In this document: positions 6,101 to 27,395 of the stretch, one piece after another
How the letters are laid out: every line of letters begins with the position of its first letter
How positions within the stretch are numbered: the stretch's first letter is position 1
From: Hormiphora californensis
Taxonomy: Eukaryota > Animalia > Ctenophora
Length of the DNA: 64,000 bases
NCBI GenBank assembly: GCA_020137815.1
Contig: CM035361.1
Coordinates: 4,588,001-4,652,000, forward strand
Direction of reading: 5' to 3'
The notes under the pieces: model-generated
Seen by the model: the letters and a program-made list of their open reading frames with translations, nothing else
What the model was told of the DNA's origin: nothing
Databases searched by the model: none
Made by a program: the position numbers and the translations under genes

Positions 6101-9100
6101 AGAAATTTGTTTGGAAAACCCGTGGCCTTTTGTCGATACTTGACGCTGCGGGAATTGCACCCTTCGTCAGAGCAAGACGTGTGGAAGAGTGAGACAGAGA
6201 ATGTGCGTGTGTTAGAACTTAGAGAGAGATGGCACAACAATACCTAGTAGCTCAGATTATGGGTGCATTTCCCGCAGCGTCAAGTATCGACAAAAGGCCA
6301 CGGGTTTTCCAAACAAATTTCTTTTGTTTTTTGGTCTAGTTTAACTTATAAAACCTTATGAGGTCAGTGTTTGACAACATTGTTTGTGGTGTCTCTCTCT
6401 CTTTGTCTCAGAGTGACACTCTTACATAGAGATAATCCCAGAATCATGATCACCCCGGCCCCCAGACATCTCTTCTCCACTTGTTGAGTTACCTAACAAC
6501 TGGTTGTGTTGTGTCGTTACGACAGTACGGTACTGGAACATAATGCTACCTTTGAATGTGGGGTTCTAAGTTCGAAGAATGAGATTGGAGTGACGTAGTT
6601 GTGACGGTGAGGATGAGTAATTCGAGATGTGAACGATAATTATAATTACTCAGAATAGAATAATTATTATAGGGATCGCCTCCGTTCGACCTTCATCATG
6701 ATGATGCTGCAGCAAAGAACAAATCTTGGAAATTACTTCATTTGGCCGGACTTGTGTTATAAATGGCACATATTATAATAAAAAATGAAGTATTCTTAAG
6801 TTATGAAGTATTTTTTCTGGATGCGACAAGAAGCATTTGAATTCCACAGATTTATGAAGCATTTTCAAATTGAAGTAAATGAAGTGAAGTATCTTCTGAT
6901 TTGAAAATACTTCAAACAAAATCTGCAACTGATTTATGAAGCATTTTCAAATTGAAGTAAATGAAGTGAAGTATCTTCTGAGTGGACAATACTTCAAACA
7001 AAATCTGCAGCTGATTGAAGTATTTCAATAGAATTTTTTAAATGAAGCAAACAACTGAAGCAAATTTTTCTGCGGTAATTACTTCTATGGTAGAAAAGTT
7101 TAACGAAGCAGTATTTATTTCCGAATTATATTAGCGAAGCAATTGCCATTTGCTTCACTTTTCTGCAGTTTTTCAAAAATAAAAGTACTTCACAAAAAAC
7201 ACTTCACTCTATTTTTTGAAGATTGAGACACGAGACTTAGCCCATCTTGTAGATCTTTTTCTCCTGATCAAGATGGTATAAATAACTCAAAATCGCCAAA
7301 ATTGCAAATACTTCATTCTAAAAAAAAGGGGCAGAACTGTATTCACCATCTCCTAATATGGCAGTAACTGTATTCACTATCTCCTAATATGGTAGTAATT
7401 GTGTTCACCATCTCCTAATATGGTAGTAACTGTATTCACCATCTCCTAATATGGTAGTAACTGTATTCACCATCTCCTAATATGGTAGTAACTGTATTCA
7501 CCATCTCCTAATATAGTAGTAACTGTATTCACCATCTCCTAATATGGCAGTAACTGTATTCACTATCTCCTAATATGGTAGTAACTGCATTCACCATCTC
7601 CTAATATAGTAGTAACTGTATTCACCATCTCCTAATATGGTAGTAACTGTATTCACTATATATCTCCTAATATGGTAGTAACTGTATTCACCATCTCCTA
7701 ATATGGCAGTAACTGTATTCACTATCTCCTAATATGGCAGTAACTGTATTCACCATCTCCTAATATGGCAGTAATTGTGTTCACCATATATCTCCTAATA
7801 TGGACATTTTACCAGTGAGGTGGGTGATAAGTCGAGTGGTGGAACAGTAGAGAAGATGCTTCTGCAATCGCTCAACGAACTTAGTCTGCAGCTCAGGGAC
7901 AAGATTGATAAGTCTGCTGTTTATTCCCTGTAAGATTTGTTTTTTTGTGCCCGCGGAAATGTGACTATCCCCTTTGAGAAGTGAGGGGTCAAGTGTAACT
8001 TGTTTCCATGTTGTACTGTTCTTACTAGAGGATCTTAAAAATAAATTGTAATTTCCTCGACCCTACTGATCGCTGTATATTTCTAAACCCACTTCTAAAC
8101 CCACTTCTAAACCCACTTCTAAACCCACTTCTAAACCCACTTCTAAGCCCACTTCTAAACCCACTTCTAAACCCACTTCTAAACCCACTTCTAAACCACT
8201 TCTAAACCCACTTCTAAACCACTTCTAAACTCACTTCTAAACCCACTTTCCTCCTCTCAGTCATATTCGGGAAGAGTTGGACTCCCTGGCTAACGATGTC
8301 CCGGATGATTTCAGCCCAGAGCCCCTGATTTGTCCCCCTCCCCCTGGTAGTGACAACAACCAACACCCTGACTCGGTTAGTATCACCATATATGGTGATA
8401 TGTGACCATATATGGGCATGTATATGTCATGAAACTGACAAACAAAATAACTATTTGACTGACCGAAAATAATTAATATATCAGGTTGACAGACAGGGTG
8501 ACAGACAGACAGACAATCGTGTTATACTGGAGCTCCAGACAATCTCGGAAGACTCAGCTGAGAGTGACAAAAGCAGTTCTGATGAAGAAGAAGAGAGTTA
8601 CTGCCCAACTCCGACCCACTCACGATCACCTTTCTCTGTTTTATCACCGAATGATCTCACCCCTGCTACCTCTCCAGCTGGAGAACTGTTCTCACTACCA
8701 ACATCACCACACACACCACCTAAAACATCACCACATACATCACCACATACATCACCGACCTCATCACCCAAAGCATCACCCTGTTCCTCCCCCTCCCTGA
8801 CAGACAAACAAACGGAAGAAATCATACTTCACTTTGCAGAAATTCTCTGCCCCGGTGAATCTTCCCCGGATGATACAGACCGTTCAATCTCGCCCTACCT
8901 GGAAGAATCACCTCTCTTCACCCCGACACCACGACCCCGTGCCAACTCAACTCTCCGGAGCTCTACAAGTGGCTCTCCTCGTGAGATGAAAATTAGGATA
9001 ACGCGGAAGATACCAGCTGGGGAGCCGTCTTTGTGTGATTCCCTGCCCAGGGCGGTGACACTGACGGAGTTTGCCGAGCACAACCCGGAGGTGATGGACA

Positions 9101-12100
9101 AGTTGAGGGATTTACAGCTCCCTGAGATGGTCATGGAGAGAACACATGTGACGGTGAAACAGAGGAAGAGGAGGGGAGGGAAGGAGGAGGGGATTAGGGG
9201 TCCAGGAAGGAGGGAGGAGGGGGTTAGGGGTCCAGGAGGGAGGGAGGAGGGGGTTAGAGGTCCAGGAGGGAGGGAGGAGGGGGTTAGATGTCCAGGAGGG
9301 AAGGAGGAGGGGATTAGGGGTCCAGGAAGGAGGGAGGAGGGGATTAGGGGTCCAGGAGGGAGGGAGGAGGGGGTTAGAGGTCCAGGAGGGAGGGAGGAGG
9401 GGATTAGGGGTCCAGGAGGGAAGGAGGAGGGGGTTAGAGGTCTAGGAGGGAAGGAGGAGGGGATTAGATGTCCAGGAGGGAAGGAGGAGGGGGTTAGAGG
9501 TCCAGGAGGGAGAGAGGAGGGGATTAGGGGTCCAGGAGGGAAGGAGGAGGGGGTTAGAGGTCCAGGAGGGAAGGAGGAGGGGGTTAGAGGTCCAGGAGGG
9601 AAGGAGGAGGGGATTAGATGTCCAGGAGGGAGGGAGGAGGGGGTTAGATGTCCAGGAGGGAGGGAGGAGGGGATTAGATGTCCAGGAGGGAGGGAGGAGG
9701 GGGTTAGATGTCCAGGAGGGAAGGAGGAGGGGATTAGATGTCCAGGAGGGAAGGAGGAGGGGGTTAGAGGTCCAGGAAGGAGGGAGGAGGGGGCTAGGGG
9801 TCCAGGAGGGAAGGAGGAGGGGATTAGATGTCCAGGAGGGAAGGAGGAGGGGATTAGATGTCCAGGAGGGAAGGAGGAGGGGATTAGATGTCCAGGAGGG
9901 AAGGAGGAGGGGGTTAGAGGTCCAGGAGGGAGAGAGGAGGGGATTAGATGTCCAGGAGGGAGGGAGGAGGGGGTTAGATGTCCAGGAGGGAGGGAGGAGG
10001 GGGTTAGATGTCCAGGAGGGAAGGAGGAGGGGATTAGATGTCCAGGAGGGAAGGAGGAGGGGATTAGATGTCCAGGAGGGAAGGAGGAGGGGATTAGATG
10101 TCCAGGAGGGAAGGAGGAGGGGATTAGATGTCCAGGAGGGAAGGAGGAGGGGATTAGATGTCCAGGAGGGAGGGAGGAGGGGATTAGAGGTCCAGGAGGG
10201 AGGGAGGAGGGGATTAGAGGTCCAGGAGGGAGGGAGGAGGGGATTAGAGGTCCAGGAGGGAGGGAGGAGGGGATTAGGGGTCCAGGAAGGAGAGAGGAGG
10301 GGATTAGGGGTCCAGGAAGGAGAGAGGAGGGGATTAGGGGTCCAGGAAGGAGAGAGGAGGGGATTAGGGAAGAAAGTAAACCTGATCATGACGAAGATGA
10401 AAGTTCAAAAGATGACAGTCTACAAAGTACTTCAAAATCAGAAGACATCTCCATCTCCGATCACCAATTCATTGATGACGTCACCTCGACATCAAACAAC
10501 CTGCCATCAGATGACGTCATTAGCGGTGACGTGATCACCATGGCAACGGATGACGTCATCACTATGGCAACCACGGAGGATGATAATTCTCTCACATCTT
10601 CTACCTCTGATTTCGCACAAATGTTGGAAGCAGAGCTAGCTGCACCAGATGGAGAGTGCGTTGTATCACCCATCCCACGACACCACATCACCCCCTCACC
10701 CCGTCACCACAGAACATCACCCTCACCCACTGCACGTGACCAGATGGTGACGTCATCACGTGATGTGACGTCACGTGACCACTGGTTGGCCCAGTTGGAG
10801 GATCCCCAGTGGTTGTGTTGGTATCTGTGCTGGCAGTGCGGTGCCGGGGAGTGGAGGGAGGTCGAGGAGGGTGTGGAGGAGTTGAGGGGAGAGAAACCGC
10901 AGTTTGTGAAGGTGTGCAGACATTTAATTAGTGCCAATTAATTACAGTGGCACCCCGATTTAGTGGCAGGATCCCCCCCCCCCCCCCCCCGAGGATGCCA
11001 CTAAATCGGGGTCCGACTGTAGTTAATTAGTGCTAATTAGTTGTTTTTGATAATTTAAACACATGACTTGACTGACACATCTCATTTCGATTAGAAATAA
11101 TGAAATAATGAAATATCGGCATTTTCAAATAATACCCATCTCTCTCTCAGGATATAACACAAGCTCTAAAAAATCTTGGGTTCCTTCAACGGAAATTGGA
11201 GGAGATCGAGAAGAATCTAACTCATGTTCGACACGAAACCATCCCTACGGTAAGAAGATGACGTCATAATACATGAGTGACGTCATTAAAAATATGTGAC
11301 GTCATTAAAAATATGTTTTGGATCGTTTACAACTTCCTGGTATATGTTTTCCTAATTTCCTCTTTCTTTTTACAGTTAGCCAAGAAAGATTCGGAGAAAA
11401 GCAAAAAGAAGAAGAAAGGTAAGCTAACATGTGTGTCTTGCTACAACACTTATCACTCAGTTACCATGGTTAACTTGATATAACGTGTATGGTTACCATG
11501 GTTACTATGGTTACCATGGTTACATCATGTGGTTACCATGGTTACCACAGCAACTCTTTCTCACGCTACTCACGGCTCATATTCTCTATAGGAAGTCGAA
11601 CTAAATAATATCACTATCATTTATATTCCTCTCCTCTTTTTGGTAAGCTTGCACACAGTCAATGAAGCACAGAATTTTATTAAAAGCCACTGGGCAAACT
11701 CGATAGTTGTGAAATATATTCTACCAGAACTTTACGATTTATCTCTCTCTCTCTTTTTAACATAAAATTCTCATTTTATTAGCATTTAAATATATTGTTT
11801 TGGGGTATTGTCTTCTTTTTTTAGTTATCCCATCGCTTGATAGCATGTTGTATATATTAGAAGCACAGCATGGTTATGACGTCATATATATGTCCATATA
11901 TGGACACATACACCCATATATGGGCATGTTGGTTTTTAGCATTGTTTGATCCCCTCTGCTGCTTTGATGGTGTTTGTAGAATGAAGTATACCTGCTTTAG
12001 TTTGTCGGGATGTTATATATTGCGATGAGCAACCTTGGAAGTGTTTAGGTAGCGCACAGCGTGACCAGTTTTAACCAATCACAGTTCAGCACGCATATAT

Positions 12101-15100
12101 GTGACCTGTGTCTCATAAGAGCTGTTCTGAGCTGTGATTGGTCAAATGCGGTCAAGCTGTGCGCTACCTGAACATTTCCGATGTTGCTCAAAAGGACAGA
12201 AAGGGAAACAGGGACAAAATGAGAGAGAAGAAGGTTTTAAAAAAGAAACAAAGTTGTCTGTCATTTTCTTGGAAAGTTTCCCTACAAAACTTTCCAAGAA
12301 TTAAATACATACTGTGGTCATGTAACGGACAGTTTTTGAAAAACAAAATATAGTTTTTACATCAGTCATAGGTCATAGTCAGTATCGATACAAACAGAAT
12401 AAAACTTACCACTTATATACTTACCACTATTACTTACCACTAAATAACTTACCACGAACTAGGCATTTTTCACCGGTAACCTCGGTTGTCCAATTCCCAT
12501 CACTGGCACACGTAAAATTCAGTCCAGTTCCGATGTAATTTAGAGATTCAGGGTCGACACACACCTACGAAAAAGTTAAAATTAAAATTTTGATTTTAAA
12601 CCCTGACACACCAGCGAAATTTTCTCCCCTATTCTTACAGTCACAATCCACGGCGTGCCTGGTGAAATTTTAACACGACCTAGCATGCAACGGGAAACCA
12701 CCACTTGTACGTGGTAGCTGAGGGTCTACAGAATGGCGCTACGGTGCGGGAAAAAAAATTCCATTCCCTAAAATCGTTTTTTTTACTTTTATTTGATTTG
12801 GGTCAAAATTGGCTATATTAAACGTGGTCCCGAAAAATCCATAATGACTTAGCACACGAAATATGTCACCCCTACCTATTTTTGCACGTAGAATCAATTG
12901 CCGTTGAAGTCGAATCTCTAAAATGACTGTAAAATGGTCAAAAGTTGATTTTTTACCATTTTTTGGAGGTTTTTGGCCCCTAAACCATTGAAAACGTTGA
13001 GATAGGAATTTGAAACTAGTGCCAATCGTTAAAATGGTCATTTTTCTACCAAGAACCAAGTTTTCGTGTATATCCGATTTATGGTTAGATTTGGGCAAAT
13101 TGTTGAAATCTGCCAACTAGGAGAACCGTAACTTGATTTTCTTGTTTTTTGGATTTTGGCATTTTTGACAAACTTCTGATTGAAATGGTCAATCGGGACC
13201 ATGCTTAAGTTGTTTATGGGACAATTTTCGACTAAAATCCAAGATTTCATACCAATCCAATAACAGATCGTTGATTTATAGAAACTTTCAGTAGGCAAAA
13301 CGGTGAAAATAAGCATGAAAAGTTGTCATTTTCACCGTTTTGCCTACTTAAATTTTCTATAAATCAACGATCTGTTATTGGATTGGTATGAAATCTTGGA
13401 TTTTAGTCGAAAATTGTCCCATAAACAACTTAAGCATGGTCCCGATTGACCATTTCAATCAGAAGTTTGTCAAAAATGCCAAAATCCAAAAAACAAGAAA
13501 ATCAAGTTACGGTTCTCCTAGTTGGCAGATTTCAACAATTTGCCCAAATCTAACCATAAATCGGATATACACGAAAACTTGGTTCTTGGTAGAAAAATGA
13601 CCATTTTAACGATTGGCACTAGTTTCAAATTCCTATCTCAACGTTTTCAATGGTTTAGGGGCCAAAAACCTCCAAAAAATGGTAAAAAATCAACTTTTGA
13701 CCATTTTACAGTCATTTTAGAGATTCGACTTCAACGGCAATCGATTCTACGTGCAAAAATAGGTAGGGGTGACATATTTCGTGTGCTAAGTCATTATGGA
13801 TTTTTCGGGACCACGTTTAATATAGCCAATTTTGACCCAAATCAAATAAAAGTAAAAAAAACGATTTTAGGGAATGGACTTTTTTTTCCCGCACCGTAGC
13901 GCCATTCTGTAGACCCTCAGCTACCACGTACAAGTGGTGGTTTCCCGTTGCATGCTAGGTCGTGTTAAAATTTCACCAGGCACGCCGTGAATCTCGCGTG
14001 CCATTTTGATTGTGACTGTGAGAACAGGGGAGAGAATTTGAGAGAGAATTTGAGAGAGAATTTGAGAGAGAATTTGAGAAATGTGCTGACCCTCACTACA
14101 TACCACAATGGAGGTACTGGGAGGTAGGGCTGGTACTATTACATCAGGGTCTTGGATCTTACTGGCACAACCTGTGGGAGGTAACGTCGGGTTATCATAC
14201 ATGAGAGAGAGAGTGTGAGAAAGAGATGCAGGGAGATGATTTTGGTATTTTTAGGGAAAGAAAGTCTGGTGTTTTTAGAAGTTGGAGAGCCAATGTAAGA
14301 ACAAATGGAGAGTCTCGAGCCCACTTGGGAGAGGTTGCGCCCTGTAGATGGGAGAGGGTGAGGGAGAGAAACAGATACAAATGGAGGGGGAGAGAGAAAA
14401 AGAGGGTGTGGTAGAGAAAAATAGGGAGTGGGAGAGAGGGAAAAAAGAGGGAGTGGAAGAGAGAGAAAAAGGGAGTGGGAGACAGAGGCAGGAAGATGAT
14501 TTTAGTATTTTTAGGGAAAGAAAGTCTGGTGTTTTTAGAAGAGGGAGAGCCAATGTGCCGAGAGAACAGATTCCTAGAGTTCTATGAATGTAAGAAAAAA
14601 ATGGAGAGTCTCGAGCCCACATACGGACAAAAAAATATCATCTAAGTCTTACCAGCGGTGTAGCCTGCAGATCCGGTATCCCATTCATTAAACCTCATCT
14701 GAGACACAGTAGTGACCCCCCAGAAATTACTGTTAGGGCAATCTTCTGCGAACACGATTCTAGCTGCCTCAACACCATCACAGAAGAAAGAGAGGGAAGT
14801 TGAAGTTTTGTAGATTGTCCATGGTTGGTATCTGTCACTGGAGAGATTGGTCTTTTTGAGGAACTCTGAACGATAGAAATATCTAAACATAAATGAAAAA
14901 GTGAGCAAATAGTTTGTGAAAAATATGAACGTAGAGACAAAATGTATCCCTAGACCATACCTTGGGTTATTAGTGACTTTAGCCCATTCATTGTCCATAC
15001 AGCCGTCAACTAAGAACGTCGGTATGCTCTTTGTAATATTTGGCAAATAAATTTGCACGGTTTTTCTGTTATCATCGCTGCTATAAAATTCCACCGATAT

Positions 15101-18100
15101 TTTGGCCCACGGTTTATCTCTATAAACCTGAACCACCAGGGGTGCGGTTTCCAAGTTCCAATCGATTCTGTTCCTTGGTGATATTGTAACTGGGTTCACT
15201 TTTTCAGTGTCGTTACTGGTCGTGTAGCTTACAGAAGCAGTGTCGCTGTACCTGTGGCCGATGTTAGATTATATAATGAGAATTTAAATCATTAGCTAAC
15301 TGGGGGGGGGGGGGGTTCAAGCCTAATTACTGCTTTATGACCATCTATGGTCACAATGTTACTACGTAGTACGTACTGAAACCTGATGAATCCGATCTGG
15401 TCGCCGCCCCAATACGTTTTACAATTGCCTCCCAATTTTGTGAAATTCAGGCTTATCAGGGTCGTATCGCTCTCGGAGATAGTCAGAGTATCATTAGTTT
15501 TCACGATTTTCCACTCTCTTGCGGTGTCAGCGCCAGTAGTAGAAGCGGGTTGAATTGGAAAGGGTTGATCAGTTCCATTTTCCGATGTCATGCAATAATT
15601 CACTTTGTAGTTAAATGCGGTCCTGAAGGTGGAGTAAAGATGGTCAAACTGTGTTGTGTTCTAATCCTTTTAATTTATGAAAGGGTTTAGAAAGGCAACT
15701 GGTTTTTGTAGCGAGTACGATTACTCCCGGTAGATTTTTGTTTTACACTTGATTGGCCAATTGATTACTTACCGAAAACGTATAGCAATCCATCCGCGAT
15801 AGACCTTATCGTTATTATAAACGGATAGCCGTACATTCTTTTTACTTGCATCTGCAGCTGTGGTCTTGATAGTCAATGATGTCTTCTCTAGGTCCAAACT
15901 TAGGAGGGGTTGATTCGGGATCTTTGTGTATAACTCTGAAAAAGGGGGATGTTTTTTTCGCTTTTTTCGCTATGGACGTCATAGGAACCTGAGATACGTC
16001 GCATCACCCCTCACTTTAGCTATAATAGTACATGTACATGCGGGCTTTAGTGGAAGCATTAGGGTGAGCTCCGTAAAACAGTCTTAGTCCTTGAACTGAC
16101 ATACACGGAACCCGGTGATTAGTATCTAACCGACCACAACGTCAAGGCTGGGTGCATGCATGTTGTCCCGGGTTCCGTGCCGGATCTTGAACTATATCCG
16201 ACGTGGAGGGATTTTGGAAGAAGGGAGAGACGCGTAGAGTCATGGCAGCGCAATGACAGTGATGGGCTTTATCATGAAGTAGAGTTTTGCAGTTGATGAG
16301 ATCCTGTCCATCGAGCTGATAGAGTTTCCCCTTACCTGTTGGTTTTCCTCTGTAGCTGTCAGATGCAGTGTCCTGGGTGCCAAATTTTATCTTTTCCACT
16401 ACATCTCCTCCCCACGTCGATACACAAATACTTTTACTACTGTCACTGAACTGGTAGTTCAGAACCTCCACCCCGTTGCACTCTATACTGAGAGCGGTGG
16501 CCGTCTTTCGAATTGTCCAAATCTTGTCCACTTCCTCTGGTGGTTGTACTGGGAGCTGGGAGGTCGAGCCGGTGCAGTGGCCGATAAAGTATTGGAAAGG
16601 TGAGGTGAACATCACAATTCACCACTTCAATATAACTCCCATCTGCAGTGTATGTAGGCACATCAATCCTGTCCTCACTCCCAGCAGTAGAGTCGGTTTT
16701 GATTTGAAGAGGGGTGCTCTCCAGATCAAATGGGATCTTAGTATCACGTACCACTGGACTCCATGTAACTGAAATGTGATGAATTAGCCACAGCTATTAT
16801 ATACCAATAAGCGATTTGTCTATCAGCCATGTTCAAATACCAGATTAAAAGGCCATGATTTTATTAAACCTTTCGTTGGGGAAGTTGCCTAGAGCGACGG
16901 AGAGACCTCTCAAGGGGGATGTTTAGGTGGTATCGATTGGTCTATCGCTTTCTCTCTCTCTTTCTATCTCTCTCTCTCTATCTTACCGGTAGAAATGGAG
17001 TTTGTCAGCAGAACAAGGACGATTCCGAGACAACAGCTAGGCATCATATGCAGCTTGGGTCCCATCTGATACAATCAGTATCTGATGTTGTATCCCCGCT
17101 ACTTCAGTTTTATCCGCGATATATTTAATAATCCACCATGCAAAGGGTATTTATTTTGGATCTTAGCCAACAAGGCAGACAAGTAACACAAGCAACGTAG
17201 AGAGCTAACTTGAGTTGTGAGTGTAGAACGTTTCTCCTGCTCTCTCTCTCTCCTCAAACAACGATTTGCCTTTTCCACAAACCTTTCCTCTCCCTTTTCC
17301 TCCCCAAGATTGTTATGTTTCTCTCTTTCTCTCTCTTCTCTCTCTCTCTCTCTCTCTCTCTCCTCTCACACCCTTTCTCTCTCTCTCCTCTCTCTCTCCC
17401 CTCTCTCTCTCTCTTCTCTCGTCTCTCTCTTCTCCTCTTCTCTCTCTCTCTCTCTCTCCTCTCTTCTCCTCTCTCTCTCTCGCTCTCTCTCTCTCTCCTC
17501 TCCTCTCCGCTTCTCTCTCCAGTTGTGTAATCGTCTCGATCGTCCTCCTTTTCCTCCTCATTTTGATTATGAGAAAGGAAAGTGTACTCCATAAACAGTA
17601 GTCAAGCCTCGATTTACCGGACGCTTGATTTATCGTGCACCTCGAAAATATATATATTGCAAAACCTCCCGATTAATCCGATAGATTTAGGTTCCTCGAT
17701 ACTATAGTCGGATCCCGATTTACCGGCATGCTCGGTAAATCTTGGTGCCCGGTATATCGGGGTGAAATACTGATGTTTTCGGCAGGTGAGTAGAACTTCG
17801 CTCCTAATAAAAGGCTGCAATAAAAGGCTGCAATAAAAGGCTGCAGAAAAAGGCTGCAATAAAAGGCTGCAATAAAAGGCTGCAGAAAAAGGCTGCAATA
17901 AAAGGCTGCAATAAAAGGCTGCAATAAAAGGCTGCAAGGGATCACGTATCCAACCAGACTAAAGCGGGGGATAGACCGAATCGTCCTCCCCTAATAGTGT
18001 TTCGTATCACGTATCGGCTGTAGTGAGACCGAATAACCCTCCCCTAATTATAGTGATTCGTGTCACGTATCCAACTAGACCATAGGCAATAGAGAGAGAC

Positions 18101-21023
18101 CGAGATAGAGAGCGAGTACGAGTGAGAACTGAGAGTGTGAAAAATCAGAATCGCGGTATGGTATCACGTACCATGGTATCCTCTAATGAAAAGCGGTTAC
18201 CAATTGACAATGAGACCTCATCGGTCCCGATACGTGATTCTCTACCGCTATGTATTCTCCATTAGTCTTTCCGTATCGATCCACGATTCAGTACAGGTAG
18301 TCAGTAACTACTGAGAGTGTTGGTCTAATGAGGTAGGGTAGATCTATTGATTGAGCGTGTAGCACAATCACAGGTGAACCACTCAACCACTTGGTTCACC
18401 TATCATAGTATTATGTGTGATTCCGCTCTACTGAATTGTGTACATAAAGACTATTGGCGAATAACGGTAGAAAATCAGTAATCACGTATTGGCACCGATT
18501 AGGTCAAATTATAGGTAACCGCCTTTCATTTAATTAATTAGAGGATATCATGAAACGTGATACAATACTTGATTAGTCGTCCATGATTCGGATCTCTCAC
18601 TCTCACCTCTCTAACTCTCTATCTCCGTCTATCTACCGCCTATGGTTTAGTTGGATACCAGGCACGAATCACTATAATTAGGGGCGGGTGATTCGGTCTC
18701 TCTACCGCTTATGGTAGAAACCGATACGTGAAACAAAACACTATTAGGGGAGGACGATTCGGTCTATCTCCTGCTTTAGTGCTTTAGTCCAGTTGGATAT
18801 GTGATCCATTGCAGCCTTTTATTGCAGCCTTTTATTGCAGCCTTTTATTGCAGCCTTTTTCTGCAGCCTTTTTCTGCAGCCTTTTTCTGCAGCCTTTTAT
18901 TGCAGCCTTTTTCTGCAGCCTTTTATTGCAGCCTTTTATTAGGAGCGAAGTTCTACTCACCTGCCATGTTTTCTTATATTGGAGGAAGTTTATCCTCCCG
19001 GTAAATCGGGGTTCCGGTAAATCGAGGTTTCTCGATACTATATTTCTCATACAATTCTTCCCTCTTTTTAAATTGTATCACCAAACATTTCCAAAAGCAC
19101 ACCAGCTCAACTAGACACCCCTATAATGCTGAATTCATGAATGTGTTTATCTGCATATAGCTAGCATGACCTCTATCTCAATTTCTCTATGCAACCTCTT
19201 ACCTCCTCTCTTCTTTTAGGTGTTGGTAGTGTCCTGGGTTGTCTTACTCCGCGTCATCCGACCCCTATCATGGATTAGAGAGATATGGTTACCATAGCAA
19301 CCCGCCGCGTCATCCTTCATGTGACGTCACAAAGATAGACATTCTAATGGTTACCATGGCAACACACTCAGTTGGGATTTGTAGGATTTAGGACTCTTTG
19401 AATAGGAGATATTTTTCGTTGCCATGGCAACATGTATTTTGTAGAATTATAGGTATTGATTTGGACAGTTTATATAATAGCGATCTGGGTTGGTAGCGTG
19501 TGAGATGGGAATGTGCAATGTTTGCAGGCATGGGGAGTTTGGAATGAACGTTTCTGTTGTTAGATTTTGGCGTTTTTGTTGATACAATTACAAGTTAGAA
19601 AATGGCAAAAATGCTTGGAAATGTATGCTTGAAAAGGTTTTTTTGTGTGAGTTTTTGGAAGAGATAATTTTTTCATGTAAATACTTAATTAATTAATCTG
19701 AATAATTATATCCTATCTACTTAATTAATTACATCTGTTTTAATTGACCTGCCAATTATAATATTGTTACTGACCATTTGATAATCTGAGATAATGTTAA
19801 AAGTGGTGGATGAAATTGAAACTTACCAAAACCAAAAACACGTGCGTTTGACTTGAATACCCTGACCTTCGAATGCCGAATGATATGTATAATGCTGTCC
19901 ACAACCTGTCCACAATGCGCCCTCGATGTGTCCTCAATGTGTCCTCGATGTGTCCTCAATGTGTCCTCGATGTGTCCACAATGTGTCCTCAATGTGTCCT
20001 CAATGTGTCCCCAATATGCCCACAATGTGTCCGTAATGTGTCCTCAAACGTTCCATAGGCAGTATGTCATTCTACTCTCCACCGGCCTTAATTAATGAAC
20101 TAGGGATATATTTATCTTCCCCAATTCTTCACAATCATGGCATGATCCATTCTCGGAGGACACGTTCATTTTCAAGTCCAACAACCACTATAAGGGTCAC
20201 CACACACCAAAGTTAAAATTAAAATTAAAATTTTGATTTTAAACCCGCACACACCAGCGGCCGTTAAAATTTCTCTCCCCCATTCTAAAAGTAACAATCT
20301 CGCGCGCGATTTTAACGGTGTGTTAAAATTTTGTCATCCAACGCGACCGTCAAAATCGTGCGTGAGATTGTTACTTTTAGAATGGGGAGAGAAATTTTAA
20401 CGGCCGCTGGTGTGTGCGGGTTTAAAATCAAAATTTTAATTTTAATTTTAACTTTGGTGTGTGGTGACCCTAAGTGTAATCTGATTATTTCATTCAAGTT
20501 CCAATATTAAATAGTATTCACCCTATTCATTCAAGTTCCAATGATAAATTGTATTCACCCTATTCATTCAAGTTCCAATATTAAATACATTGTATTCACC
20601 GTATGTGTGTTTGCAGATAGTAAACAGGAAAAGGATGGAAAGCGTAAGTTTAGTGTTTGTATCGTGAAGCAGCGCTGAGTTATAAATTGTGTAACTTTCA
20701 TCCTAGAAGATGAAATGTGATCCAGATCCTCTTTTTAAACACAACTGATCCTCATATAAATCCTTACAAACCAAATCAAATGGTATAAAACCATAAAACA
20801 CGCTTCTTAATTAATCAGCCTCATTTTTTTCTAATTATCTACTCCCTGATTATTCCCACCCCCCAATCTTTTTACAACCCACACACTTGAATAACACCTC
20901 TCTCTCACCACAGGACTGAGCGCACTGTTCAAGAGTAAATCAGAGAGTTCGGATCTCAAGAAGGCGTCCTCTAAACTCAGTCTCAACAGCAACGTGTCGG
21001 ACAGTGGTGTCCAAAAGGGATAG
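196..21023 (+). CDS. Spliced gene, 5' incomplete: CH-domain protein with long low-complexity region and short C-terminal coiled-coil/basic tail
   Basis: Exons with AG/GT ends: 196-284, 679-792, 881-922, 1256-1295, 1539-2090, 2538-2647, ~7816/7820-7929 (acceptor phase uncertain), 8261-8375, 8485-10911, 11151-11249, 11376-11418, 20617-20643, 20914-21023 (TAG). All junctions but one are phase-compatible. The first two exons read DLNKDPRMRVEILPNIDKCLQFSK|NKHMMIGDVASRDVVKGDELQITILLEQL, matching the C-terminal half of a CH domain (KMRxxxLENVxKxLxF...IGAxDIVDGNxxLIL). Confidence 0.7.
5496..6056. repeat. 162-bp tandem repeat (~3.5 copies) inside the TIR element
   Basis: tcgatttatggggggtcgt starts at 5496, 5658, 5820 and 5983; a degenerate copy lies near 5362. 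Confidence 0.9.
6081..6342. repeat. Inverted repeat with ~80-bp arms
   Basis: 6081-6162 is the near-perfect reverse complement of 6261-6342. Confidence 0.9.
8082..8248. repeat. 12-bp minisatellite (ctaaacccactt)
   Basis: About 14 tandem copies just upstream of the acceptor at 8260. Confidence 0.9.
9172..10370 (+). repeat. 30-bp coding minisatellite, ~40 copies, encoding G(G/R)(K/R)EEG(I/V)R(G/C)P
   Basis: Exact 30-nt period; open in the frame of exon 8485-10911. Confidence 0.9.
10945..11019. mobile_element. Tc1/mariner-type MITE (TA-flanked, CAGT termini); second copy at 38294-38392
   Basis: ta-cagt..ccccgatttagtggca / tgccactaaatcggggtccgactg-ta; same family seen at two loci. Confidence 0.75.
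11936..17065 (-). CDS. Nested secreted protein: signal peptide, three ~140-aa repeated beta-rich domains and a sushi/CCP domain; one frameshift in exon 2
   Basis: Exons (-): 17065-16987 (MGPKLHMMPSCCLGIVLVLLTNSIST), 16768-16336 (frameshift ~16615-16631), 15935-15773, 15622-15377, 15251-14961, 14837-14653, 14171-14104, 12564-12453, and tentative last exon 11991-11936. All junctions are phase-compatible. Repeats share (D/N)LExxxL...WxIxKT...WG...F...DT(A/G)SxxY. The sushi part reads C...VC...FTCASDGNW...C. Confidence 0.75.
12027..12190. mobile_element. Degenerate MITE-like hairpin
   Basis: tgagcaac..tgtttaggtagcgcacagc..tgacc / ggtca..gctgtgcgctacctgaaca..gttgctca. Confidence 0.6.
12551..14092. 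mobile_element. PIF/Harbinger (Tourist-like) MITE, diverged, interrupted by a foldback element
   Basis: GGGTC...GACCC termini; 3-bp TSD TCA (12548-12550, 14093-14095); left arm matches the intact copy at 20194-20470. Confidence 0.8.
12649..13989. mobile_element. 1.34-kb near-perfect palindromic foldback element, Chapaev-like (CMC) termini
   Basis: CACGG...CCGTG ends; 4-bp TSD AATC (12645-12648, 13990-13993); ~660-bp arms differing by only a few bases. CAC termini with a 4-bp TSD are typical of Chapaev. Confidence 0.85.
17781..18965. mobile_element. Foldback TIR element with 8-bp TSD (Merlin-like GG termini)
   Basis: ggcaggtgagtagaacttcgctcc / ggagcgaagttctactcacctgcc; TSD ATGTTTTC (17773-17780, 18966-18973); 13-bp subterminal arrays (aataaaaggctgc) inverted at the two ends. 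Confidence 0.85.
19900..20047. repeat. 11-bp minisatellite (tgtgtcctcaa)
   Basis: Tandem copies read directly. Confidence 0.85.
20194..20470. mobile_element. PIF/Harbinger (Tourist-like) MITE, intact
   Basis: Long TIRs starting gggtcaccacacaccaaagttaaaa; TSD TAA on both sides. Confidence 0.9.
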
Positions 21024-25656: not shown

Positions 25657-27395
25657 TCACTGCCCAGAAGCACTAGAACTCGTAATAAACTCAACAGCAG
25701 AGTCCAAACTCCCCGGATCCCTGTGTACAAATCTGTGCTCCCCCGTCTTGGCGGTATACATCCCCACTTTCTTGCCCTCCCTCTCACATGCCTCCCTGAG
25801 CACCTCGGAGTGCCGGAGGGGAATTGTCCTATCATTCATAGCGTGGATAAGGTGTACCGGGAGGGATATGGTTGGAAGTAGGTCCACGGTTGGAAAAATT
25901 GACTCCATTGACCGGGGATTCTATCTCGTGTTATCCTGAAGTAGTCCCAGTACTTGGCCGCTGGGAACGATTTGCATGCTTCACTCGCGCTGATAAAAGC
26001 TGACTCTAGGATCAGACCAATGACCCTCCCTGACACTTGTCCCGGTGATTCGTCTAACATGGTCGCCAGGAATCGTGTTGAGATGCCGGTTCCCAGAGAG
26101 TGGCCCCAGACAACGAGGCGGTGGGTTGGGAAATTAGATGTCACCCATTGGTAGACTATTTTGCAGTCTCGGACGGTGCTCCCCTCGCTGGCCCTAGCTC
26201 CCTTACTGTCCCCAAAGCCGCGGTAGTCAAATGTGACGGTGGTGAATCCAAGGTCTTGGAGTTTTTGGTAAAATTCAACACGGTGCGGTTTACCTGCAGA
26301 TATAGAGAAGGGGTGTTAGTTAGGGTGTTAGTCAGGGTGTTAGACGTTAGTTAGGGTGTTAGATAGGGTGTTAGTTAGGGTGTTAGATAGGATGTTAGTT
26401 AGGTATTGGTGACATAGACACCGTGCGCGACCAAGATTAAGCTCACACAATGTGCGAGCTCGATCTCGCACGCACTAGGTGTCAATGTCACCAAAGTTAG
26501 GTAGAGAAGATACGCGGTACTACCATGCCACTACCGGTAGTATATGTGAGTTGTAAAGTTTGAAACATAGCTTAGAGAAAAGGGAAATGGATTATGGACC
26601 CCTGGCCTGATCGGGATCCTTCCATTGACCAGCTGCGCTCTGCAGTTGGCTCCATTGCAACCTATTCTCGCTCCGCAAAGAATGTATGTCACAAACTACC
26701 TATGTGAGATCGATCTCGATCGCTGCGCGACCTCGATCTCACTTAGGTATCAATGTGGCCAAACTCTGCAGTAGTCTCCTACTTCTGTTCGTTATTGACA
26801 TTGTTGGGTAACACCCCTTACTCAACAAGTTCGTTATGAATCTCTTCAGCTTCTGTTGTACAACAAAGAGCCTCCGCAGTGTCCAAATTTATTGGTTCTC
26901 CCACCGCGGTGCACTCAGATCAACTTACCTCTGTTGTTGGATGCTCCATGACAGTAGAAAATGAGAACCTTCTCAGCTCTCTCCTCGACTGTCGGGTTTA
27001 TCACCCACAGACCAATCTTCCCCGTTGAGCCAGGCACCTGGGGGAAGTTATGGTTAATTTGGTGGCATGGATTGAGCTCACAATTAGTGGTGTGAACAAG
27101 ATGTCTCATTCTCAAAAATTTGAGTCAAGTATTCAAAATCAGACTGAAAGGTTGTGGGAATACTTACGTCGAGAAAGAAATTCTCAGTAAGTGTGAGGCC
27201 CAATTTCTCCGGGTCCGCCAGGTGTCTATCATGTTTTGCGGGGTAGTTGAACACTCCAGAAAACAGGAATCTGTTCTTGAATGCTCCCCAGTGGAGAAAG
27301 AGATAGGGGACCACAAAGAACAGGATGGTGGATATGATGGTTAGGGAGAGAACGGTTGGGAAGAGGAAGTGGCTGAAGAATGATAGGGATAACAT
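25657..27395 (-). CDS. ABHD12: ABHD12-like alpha/beta hydrolase (lysophosphatidylserine/monoacylglycerol lipase family); one frameshift at a homopolymer
   Basis: Exons 27395-27168, 27037-26929, 26293-25657. N-terminal TM segment; motifs YCHGASNNRGKPHRVEFY, TFDYRGFGDS, WGHSLGTG (nucleophile), LILESAF, LIHAMNDRTIP (acid) and GEH (His). Frame change at the G4 run 25914-25917. Confidence 0.85.

What the first reader, a model, noticed from the sequence alone, without database searches (positions are those of the whole stretch)
12548..14104. Intron apparently born from a MITE insertion, with transposon codons restoring a sushi-domain cysteine
Seen: removing the Harbinger MITE (12551-14092) and one TCA TSD gives a continuous minus-strand frame ATT GTG GTA TGT AGT GAA TCT CTA AAT TAC (IVVCSESLNY). 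In the present sequence a donor inside the old exon (GTG|gtatgt, 14103) and an acceptor inside the MITE terminus (ctttttcgtag|, 12565) splice in frame to IV-VCVDP-ESLNY, so MITE bases replace the lost Val-Cys. The intact MITE copy at 20194 lacks this AG, so it arose after insertion or is subfamily-specific. A 1.34-kb foldback later landed inside. Inference: intron gain by transposon insertion with a readable before/after state.
Basis: partly seen in the sequence, partly recalled or inferred. Interest (0 to 1): 0.85.

Follow-up and report, generated by a model that had tools for sequence, protein, structure and literature searches.

The report
Transposon-split sushi exon, possibly a new intron
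A small cut-and-paste transposon, later hit by a second one, sits inside a protein-coding exon of a comb-jelly-type gene and has the right signals to be spliced out in frame as a new intron, but no RNA data could be reached to show that this happens.

Summary
The DNA observation is confirmed at every point checked. On the minus strand, a 1,542-bp terminal-inverted-repeat element (12551-14092) with a 3-bp duplication (TCA) sits in the last sushi-like exon of an otherwise intact secreted-protein gene. Removing it and one duplication restores IVVCSESLNY. The strongest donor (GTG|GTATGT, 14103) and much the strongest acceptor (tttttcgtAG|, exon resumes 12564) are in frame and stop-free. They give IV-VCVDP-ESLNY and keep all four cysteines.

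The acceptor AG did not arise after insertion: an older, degenerate MITE subfamily carries CCTACG in its repeats. The 1,341-bp foldback is an independent, very young family (at least 40 copies at 98-99% identity, 4-bp duplications) nested in the MITE.

A pre-existing intron is excluded, because the empty site leaves only 8-11 nt. Paralogous sushi modules are uninterrupted.

Splicing itself is untested. The only reachable runs do not cover this gene, and no orthologue or empty allele was found. The family does not behave like an introner. A competing donor at 14096 would shift the frame.

Verdict: a credible single-locus transposon-born intron candidate, about 50% likely to be spliced as proposed. 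The scan has noted similar transposon-in-exon cases elsewhere in this genome.

The parts
16987..17047 (-). First coding exon: ATG at 17047, signal-peptide-like MMPSCCLGIVLVLLTNSIST, ends in phase 1 before GTAAGA
   Evidence: Read from the sequence. The phase fits exon A.
14653..16768 (-). Six exons encoding three copies of an unnamed ctenophore domain of about 150 aa. A 16768-16623, B 16555-16336, C 15935-15773, D 15622-15377, E 15251-14961, F 14882-14653. All are open with consistent phases.
   Evidence: Family hits come from Pleurobrachia and Mnemiopsis proteins.
14104..14171 (-). Upstream part of the sushi-like exon kept in the proposed mRNA. The acceptor AG is at 14173-14172 and the exon starts in phase 1. 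It encodes CASKIQDPDVIVPALPPSTSIV.
   Evidence: Exon F ends in phase 1, so G+GT gives Gly.
12565..14103 (-). Proposed new intron of 1,539 nt, from GTATGT to cgtAG. Before the foldback landed it would have been about 194 nt, within this gene's intron range of 67-481 nt.
   Evidence: Splice-site enumeration. Splicing is not shown by any RNA data.
14096..14103 (-). Eight former exon bases (GTATGTAG, holding the old Val-Cys codons) that would now be intronic. A competing donor GTA|GTGAGG starts at 14096.
14093..14095 (.). Target-site duplication copy 1 (TCA on the plus strand, TGA in gene sense)
12548..12550 (.). Target-site duplication copy 2 (TCA on the plus strand), exonic
12551..12648 (.). MITE arm on the acceptor side. 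It is of the old-subfamily type, with CCTACG and CACAGTCACAATC.
   Evidence: Alignment A3.
12551..12564 (-). Fourteen MITE bases that would be exonised (GTG TGT GTC GAC CC, giving Val-Cys-Val-Asp-Pro with the duplication)
13994..14092 (.). MITE arm on the donor side. The terminal GGGTCAGCACA is kept and about 55 nt of the repeat are missing. In their place stands a 12-nt tandem (AAATTCTCTCTC, four copies, 14027-14081). This 100-nt end is unique in the genome.
12649..13989 (.). Nested foldback transposon of 1,341 bp, with termini CACGGCG...CGCCGTG and arms 99% complementary. Its 4-bp duplication AATC lies at 12645-12648 and 13990-13993.
   Evidence: at least 40 full copies at 98-99%; 4-bp duplications at other copies.
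12453..12564 (-). Downstream part of the sushi-like exon, encoding VCVDPESLNYIGTGLNFTCASDGNWTTEVTGEKCLVR. It ends in phase 1 before GTAAGT.
12400..12452 (-). Four tandem copies of the GGTAAGT donor. Read-through gives GKLFSGK and a stop at 12432-12430, so this is probably the last coding exon.
   Evidence: Family member P0007 ends 9 aa after its sushi.
20194..20470 (.). Intact 277-bp copy of the young MITE subfamily (duplication TAA), without the acceptor AG

Best explanation
Shown: a MITE of an old, degenerate subfamily inserted into the C-terminal sushi-like exon of a secreted protein gene. The gene encodes a signal peptide, three ctenophore-specific domains and one sushi-like module. The MITE has 3-bp duplications and GGGTC...CACACACC termini and looks PIF/Harbinger-like. 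It landed one codon after the second cysteine. A young 1,341-bp foldback transposon later landed inside it.

Inferred: the gene survives because the spliceosome removes bases 14103-12565 as a GT-AG intron. The donor is a cryptic GTATGT that already lay in the exon 8 nt upstream of the insertion. The acceptor, with its T-rich tract, is the ...TTTTTCGTAG that the subfamily carries 14 nt inside each terminal repeat. The mRNA loses 8 exon bases and gains 14 MITE bases, a net gain of two codons. Val-Cys-Ser becomes Val-Cys-Val-Asp-Pro, and the second cysteine is now encoded by the transposon terminus.

The donor-side repeat has lost the part complementary to the acceptor region, so the acceptor is left unpaired. 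The huge foldback hairpin would bring the two splice sites within about 190 nt of each other.
For: DNA anatomy:
- The repeats, the duplication and the restored frame are all present.
- The gene is otherwise intact. Eight exons have consistent phases and no stop.
- Its architecture equals that of Pleurobrachia protein P0007, which is 455 aa and ends in a Pfam Sushi.

Splice signals:
- Among all GT and AG sites in the region, 14103 is the top donor (2.6) and 12564 is much the top acceptor (6.4, against 2.0 for the next). This pair is in frame, stop-free and keeps four Cys.
- GTATGG donors and TAG acceptors are used elsewhere in this gene.
- In the minimum-energy fold of the pre-mRNA, the pyrimidine tract before the AG is unpaired.

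Age and origin:
- The acceptor motif is inherited from the subfamily.
- The MITE looks long-resident. It is about 80% identical to any other copy, one arm is eroded, both ends are unique in the genome, and a younger transposon is nested in it. The coding sequence has nevertheless stayed open.
- Six or more paralogous sushi modules are single uninterrupted frames.
Against: - No RNA evidence exists. The only reachable runs (two marine metatranscriptomes and one small run) give no depth on any exon of this gene.
- No homologue of exons E or F, or of the sushi exon, is in the protein collections. Two metagenome scans for the junction or the exon found nothing.
- A second plausible donor (GTA|GTGAGG at 14096, score 1.0) gives a frameshift and a stop with the same acceptor.
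- An in-frame pair is expected one time in three by chance.
- The age of the insertion is not established, because an old-looking element can transpose late.
- The gene belongs to a family with at least 446 domain copies, where dead members are expected.
- Earlier scan notes in this genome found comparable transposon-in-exon cases to be young alleles.
Confidence: 0.5

Rival explanations
1. The insertion is a disabling or neutral-null allele, or this is an early pseudogene. It broke the last exon of one member of a very large gene family. Transcripts are then unspliced, mis-spliced (donor 14096 gives a premature stop) or degraded. The in-frame solution would be a coincidence.
For: - No transcript evidence at all.
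- The gene is absent from the protein collections.
- The family has at least 446 domain copies.
- A competing frame-shifting donor exists.
- The genome fits a species reported with about 3.2% heterozygosity (PMC8527503; the identification is an inference).
- Earlier scan notes judged similar cases to be young insertion alleles.
- The MITE family shows no tendency to sit in open frames.
Against: - The MITE looks old and eroded in place, yet about 520 codons in eight exons carry no stop or frameshift.
- The best donor and the best acceptor happen to be the in-frame pair that preserves the cysteine.
Confidence: 0.35
2. The gene makes a truncated or tail-swapped protein. Transcripts read from the exon into the MITE. 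They add about 56 transposon-encoded residues (including SQIL four times, from the 12-nt tandem) up to the stop at 13923-13921. The three N-terminal domains stay intact and half of the sushi module is lost.
For: The frame stays open from 14250 to 13924. The 12-nt repeat is a multiple of three. The sushi module is C-terminal, so truncation spares the rest of the protein.
Against: A strong donor and a strong acceptor flank the element. Half a disulfide-bonded module with an unpaired cysteine is unlikely to fold. There is no RNA evidence either way.
Confidence: 0.12
3. An intron already existed at this position and the MITE merely landed inside it.
For: Some sushi modules in other genes are split by introns (general knowledge, not tested here).
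Against: - The repeats and the duplication fix the insertion exactly. Without the element, only 8-11 nt lie between the donor and the downstream coding bases, too few for an intron.
- The acceptor lies inside the MITE.
- Paralogous sushi modules are uninterrupted.
Confidence: 0.02

Closest known systems
Single transposon-derived spliceosomal introns, that is, transposon insertions in exons removed through cryptic or transposon-borne splice sites (reviewed in PMC11282704; the maize Ds/dSpm alleles are recalled from memory)
   Same: A DNA transposon with terminal repeats and a duplication lies inside a former exon. The splice signals come partly from the element and partly from nearby exon sequence. 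The product is in frame with a few residues changed.
   Different: Splicing is not demonstrated here. The element is compound, a MITE plus a nested foldback. The host appears to be a ctenophore, for which no such case turned up in the paper search.
Introners, the intron-generating transposon families of Micromonas, Aureococcus, dinoflagellates and others (PMC9860276, PMC12130899)
   Same: A short non-autonomous element with terminal repeats and a 3-bp duplication. One splice site is carried by the element and the other is recruited from host sequence. Some known introners also add a few codons, for example 12 bp in Aureococcus (PMC9860276).
   Different: Introners are families whose many near-identical copies each form an intron. 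Here the copy is unique in sequence. 22 young copies do not sit in open frames more than random sites do. The old-subfamily copies in hand are mostly one-ended relics outside obvious frames. Using the element's own two ends would leave 19 nt and shift the frame.
PIF/Harbinger-derived (Tourist-like) MITEs
   Same: 3-bp duplications that are mostly TTA or TAA (9 of 13 perfect ones). Long terminal repeats, a size of 277 bp and hundreds of copies. DDE_Tnp_4 transposase remnants are present in the genome, one of them 3 kb from a matching terminus.
   Different: The link to an autonomous partner was not verified. This copy's duplication is TCA, not TWA.
Other transposon-in-exon candidates noted by this scan in the same genome (s1-875000, s1-875014, s1-870277, s1-870283)
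   Same: A DNA transposon inside a coding exon with ends that could be spliced in frame, and no RNA coverage.
   Different: According to their follow-ups, those that were followed up are young insertions (a Merlin element and a 4.3-kb element). Here the host MITE is old and eroded, and only the nested foldback is young.

Membership tests
Transposon-born spliceosomal intron (single locus) | A transposon with terminal repeats and a target-site duplication lies inside what was one continuous exon | tested here: met
   Excision restores IVVCSESLNY, and the exon phases fit the neighbouring exon.
Transposon-born spliceosomal intron (single locus) | Canonical GT-AG sites bracket the element and keep the reading frame | tested here: met
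   the top donor (14103) and the top acceptor (12564) are in frame with no stop. The scoring matrix is approximate.
Transposon-born spliceosomal intron (single locus) | The stretch is removed from mature mRNA | not testable with these tools
   One search gave zero depth on all exons in the three reachable runs.
Transposon-born spliceosomal intron (single locus) | Orthologues or paralogues lack an intron at the site | tested here: inconclusive
   Paralogous sushi modules are uninterrupted. No orthologue or empty allele was found.
Introner family | Many similar copies, each forming an intron in unrelated genes | tested here: not met
   - No close sibling of this copy exists.
- For 22 young copies the median open frame across the empty site is 17 codons, against 22 at random sites.
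- The old copies are relics.
- The sample is limited, because no more genome letters could be fetched.
Introner family | The element itself supplies at least one splice site | tested here: met
   The AG and the T-rich tract lie in the terminal repeat and are shared by the old subfamily.
PIF/Harbinger MITE | 3-bp target-site duplication, typically TWA | tested here: met
   13 of 22 copies have perfect 3-bp duplications, 9 of them TTA or TAA. This copy has TCA.
PIF/Harbinger MITE | Termini shared with an autonomous element that encodes a DDE_Tnp_4 transposase | tested here: inconclusive
   The best DDE_Tnp_4 frame is at C4:1000481-1000903. An old-type terminus lies at C4:1003860-1003874 in the fitting orientation. 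The sequence was not fetched.
Sushi / CCP module (PF00084) | Four cysteines and a tryptophan in the consensus spacing, on a phase 1-1 exon | tested here: met
   Read: C-22-C-14-C-14-C with W, and phase 1 at both ends.
Sushi / CCP module (PF00084) | A significant match to the Pfam model | tested here: inconclusive
   - The halves scanned apart give no hit.
- The downstream half is 41% identical to the Pfam-positive Sushi of P0007.
- It scores 11 bits against a profile built from the family's sushi modules.

The most novel reading that the evidence does not exclude
The old MITE subfamily carries a ready-made 3' splice site (T-rich tract plus GTAG) 14 nt inside both terminal repeats, followed by GTGTGTG, which is open in every frame. 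Any exon insertion near a cryptic donor is therefore half pre-adapted to become an intron. Together with the other transposon-in-exon cases noted in this genome, this would mean ongoing transposon-driven intron gain in a ctenophore. That lineage is an early-branching animal group where the process has not been described.
Probability: 0.12. Interest if true: 0.75.

Novelty: new member of a known kind. Interest (0 to 1): 0.42.

Why it matters
Clear cases of intron birth with both the before and the after state readable are rare in animals. The large introner survey found introners in only two animal groups (PMC9860276). If junction reads confirm this one, it would be a clean animal example. It would show how a cryptic exonic donor and a transposon-borne acceptor turn a disruptive insertion into an intron, with transposon bases recoding a structural cysteine.

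It is directly testable. If the genome is Hormiphora californensis, as its size and contig number suggest, then RNA-seq and Iso-Seq from the sequenced individual are public (PMC8527503). The same test could cover the other transposon-in-exon candidates in this genome.

If no junction reads are found, the locus is an ordinary insertion allele in a large gene family.

Tried and rejected
RNA and allele searches:
- RNA test: the run search returned only two marine metatranscriptomes and one small run. Laid on 11000-16700, they cover only transposon pieces and a simple repeat. They give no exon depth and no joints, so the test is uninformative, not negative.
- Empty site or haplotig in the same assembly: both exon flanks are single copy.
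- Public metagenome and metatranscriptome contigs: a pattern matching either the empty site or the spliced junction found nothing, and a 24-nt exon word found nothing.

Orthologue and annotation searches:
- A profile search of 1.84 billion representatives found the domain family in Pleurobrachia and Mnemiopsis. Nothing matched exon E or the sushi exon, and exon F found only distant family members at about 43% identity.
- A 208-aa query across exons E-F found nothing in the 5.8-billion collection.

Ideas rejected:
- The acceptor arose after insertion. Rejected, because the old subfamily carries it.
- The whole 1.5 kb is one long-repeat element. Rejected, because the foldback has its own termini, its own 4-bp duplications and dozens of independent copies.
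- Introner behaviour. Not seen.
- A pre-existing intron. Excluded by the geometry.

Limits:
The candidate autonomous element and more old-subfamily copies were therefore not examined.
The only joined step was an in-script translation to enumerate frames.
Full report
**What is there**

On the minus strand, the window carries a gene whose exons I could read with consistent phases and no stop.
- A first exon starts at the ATG at 17047 and encodes a signal-peptide-like MMPSCCLGIVLVLLTNSIST. It ends in phase 1.
- Six exons (16768-14653) encode three copies of an unnamed two-exon domain of about 150 aa.
- A phase 1-1 exon starts at 14171 and ends at 12453 before GTAAGT.
- Read-through of that donor adds GKLFSGK and a stop at 12432-12430.

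The domain has no Pfam match. It has at least 446 candidate copies in this genome. Its relatives in a 1.84-billion-protein library that carry names are from the comb jellies Pleurobrachia bachei and Mnemiopsis leidyi.

One Pleurobrachia protein, P0007 (455 aa), has the same architecture. It has a signal peptide, three domains and one C-terminal module that Pfam calls Sushi at 30.7 bits, followed by a 9-residue tail.

The genome is 110.69 Mb in 45 contigs. This fits the published Hormiphora californensis assembly of 110 Mb, 44 scaffolds and 13 chromosomes (PMC8527503). That identification is an inference, not a result.

- The last exon is interrupted at 12551-14092 by an element with termini GGGTCGACACA... 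and ...TGTGCTGACCC. It is flanked by TCA at 12548-12550 and 14093-14095.
- Taking out the element and one TCA gives ...ATT GTG GTA TGT AGT GAA TCT CTA AAT TAC... (IVVCSESLNY). This completes a module with the spacing C-22-C-14-C-14(W)-C.
- The downstream half is 41% identical to the Sushi of P0007.
- The two halves scanned separately give no Pfam hit, so 'sushi-like' is the safe wording.
- The only joined step was an in-script translation to enumerate frames.

**The two transposons**

The outer element belongs to a MITE family whose terminus GGGTCNNCACACACC occurs 464 times in the genome, against 3 for the reversed control.

A young subfamily is 277 bp long and its copies are 98-100% alike. 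It has 3-bp duplications that are mostly TTA or TAA. The copy at 20194-20470 belongs to it. DDE_Tnp_4 (PIF/Harbinger-type) transposase remnants exist in the genome. The best one lies 3 kb from a matching terminus in the fitting orientation. This is suggestive, not verified.

The exon copy is only about 80% identical to the young copies. It groups instead with an older, heterogeneous subfamily whose copies are 82-89% alike and mostly one-ended relics.

Its donor-side arm has lost about 55 nt of the repeat and gained four copies of a 12-nt tandem. Its centre is shortened, and this 100-nt end occurs nowhere else in the genome.

Inside it sits a separate 1,341-bp foldback (12649-13989).
- Its termini are CACGGCG...CGCCGTG and its arms are 99% complementary.
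- It is flanked by AATC on both sides.
- At least 40 other full copies are 98-99% identical, each with its own 4-bp duplication at an unrelated site.

**The splice model**

- The best donor is GTG|GTATGT at 14103 (score 2.6).
- The best acceptor by a wide margin is taattttaactttttcgtag|GTG, with the exon resuming at 12564 (6.4, against 2.0 for the next).
- This pair is in frame and stop-free. It gives ...STSIV|VCVDPESLNY..., which is two residues longer than the original and keeps four cysteines.
- In that frame the codon just upstream of 12564 is TAG, so 12564 is the earliest possible open start.
- Donors of the GTATGG type and TAG acceptors are used elsewhere in this gene.
- Before the foldback arrived, the intron would have been about 194 nt. 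This gene's other introns measure 67-481 nt.
- In the predicted fold of the pre-mRNA, the pyrimidine tract before the AG is unpaired. The repeat segment that would pair with it is the one missing from the donor-side arm. This is a prediction only.

1. The acceptor AG is not a change that arose after insertion. Eight other copies carry GGGTC[AG]GCACACACCTAC..., and both arms of one complete old copy have it. The exon copy differs only in a purer pyrimidine run, CTTTTTC against TTTTGCC or TTTTGTC.
2. The 'restored' cysteine is partly built in. The terminus reads GTGTGTGT, so TGT appears in all three frames.
3. There is a competing donor, GTA|GTGAGG at 14096, formed by the duplication and the MITE end (score 1.0). 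With the same acceptor it shifts the frame and meets TGA.
4. The family does not behave like an introner.
   - The exon copy has no close sibling.
   - Empty sites of 22 young copies are not in longer open frames than random sites (median 17 against 22 codons).
   - Using the element's own two ends would leave 19 nt, which breaks the frame.

**What could not be shown**

Splicing is untested.
Laid on 11000-16700, they cover only foldback pieces and a simple repeat. They show no depth on any exon and no joints. This says nothing either way.
- No empty site, haplotig or paralogue of the exon exists in the assembly.
- No homologue of exons E-F or the sushi exon is in the protein collections.
- Two metagenome scans found nothing.

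**Weighing**

A pre-existing intron is excluded. Without the element only 8-11 nt separate the donor from the downstream coding bases, and the acceptor lies in the MITE. Paralogous sushi modules are single frames. So if the stretch is spliced, the insertion created the intron.

For splicing:
- The best donor and the best acceptor form the one frame-preserving, cysteine-preserving pair.
- The MITE looks long-resident while about 520 codons have stayed open.

Against splicing:
- An in-frame pair is a one-in-three event.
- The insertion is not dated.
- The gene sits in a very large family.
- The species is reported as highly heterozygous (PMC8527503).
- Earlier notes of this scan on the same genome describe similar transposon-in-exon cases. 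Their follow-ups judged these to be young insertions without RNA support (I did not check them).

I put the in-frame splicing model at about 0.5, a null or decaying allele at about 0.35, and a read-through truncated product at about 0.12.

**Comparison with what is known**

Insertion of a transposon that becomes an intron through element-borne and nearby exonic signals is a described route of intron gain (review PMC11282704). Introner families show every combination of splice-site recruitment, including the addition of a few codons (PMC9860276).

This locus works like those cases but is a single event, not a member of an introner family. No paper in the held library links introners with ctenophores. 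The large survey found introners in only two animal groups (PMC9860276).

It is therefore a new member of a known kind. Its interest is moderate until junction reads are checked, which is easy with the public RNA-seq and Iso-Seq of the sequenced animal.

Noticed in passing
window 12400-12453 (minus strand): The end of the sushi exon and its donor (GTG|GTAAGT) are repeated four times in tandem, in units of 13-15 nt.
   Followed up: no
window 14653-16768 (minus strand); G000 genome-wide: An unnamed two-exon domain of about 150 aa (motif W-I-x-K-T...L...C-x-G...W-G-G-D...D-x-A-S-x-Y) has no Pfam hit. It has at least 446 candidate copies in this genome and is often alternated with sushi modules. 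Named relatives come only from Pleurobrachia and Mnemiopsis. It looks like a large ctenophore-specific secreted family.
   Followed up: partly
window 12649-13989; L051-L060: A foldback transposon family of 1,341 bp has termini CACGGCG...CGCCGTG and 4-bp duplications. At least 40 full copies are 98-99% identical, so it was very recently active. Pieces at 98-100% identity occur in two marine oligo-dT metatranscriptomes.
   Followed up: partly
G000:C4:1000481-1003874: The best DDE_Tnp_4 (PIF/Harbinger) frame in the genome lies 3 kb from an old-type MITE terminus in the fitting orientation. It is a candidate autonomous partner of the MITE family.
   Followed up: no
window about 14545-14640 and 14235-14330 (minus strand): The intron before the sushi exon holds a segment of about 90 nt twice (gggctcgagactctccattt...ctaaaaata.caaaatcatct), with a CT-rich low-complexity stretch between the copies.
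   Followed up: no
window 8898-10404: A long minisatellite with a 24-nt period, G+C rich and strongly skewed, is open in several frames on the minus strand. Whether it is coding is unknown. Clusters of TGACGTCA palindromes lie next to it at 10400-10800 and 11260-11330.
   Followed up: no
window 25660-26315 (minus strand): Exons of an alpha/beta-hydrolase gene (Hydrolase_4 and Abhydrolase_1 hits, E about 1e-13).
   Followed up: no
G000:C12:5820355-5820496 and C12:5563181-5563322: Old-subfamily MITE copies lie within a few hundred bases of exons of paralogous genes of the same domain family. These would be natural places to look for further exon or intron insertions.
   Followed up: no
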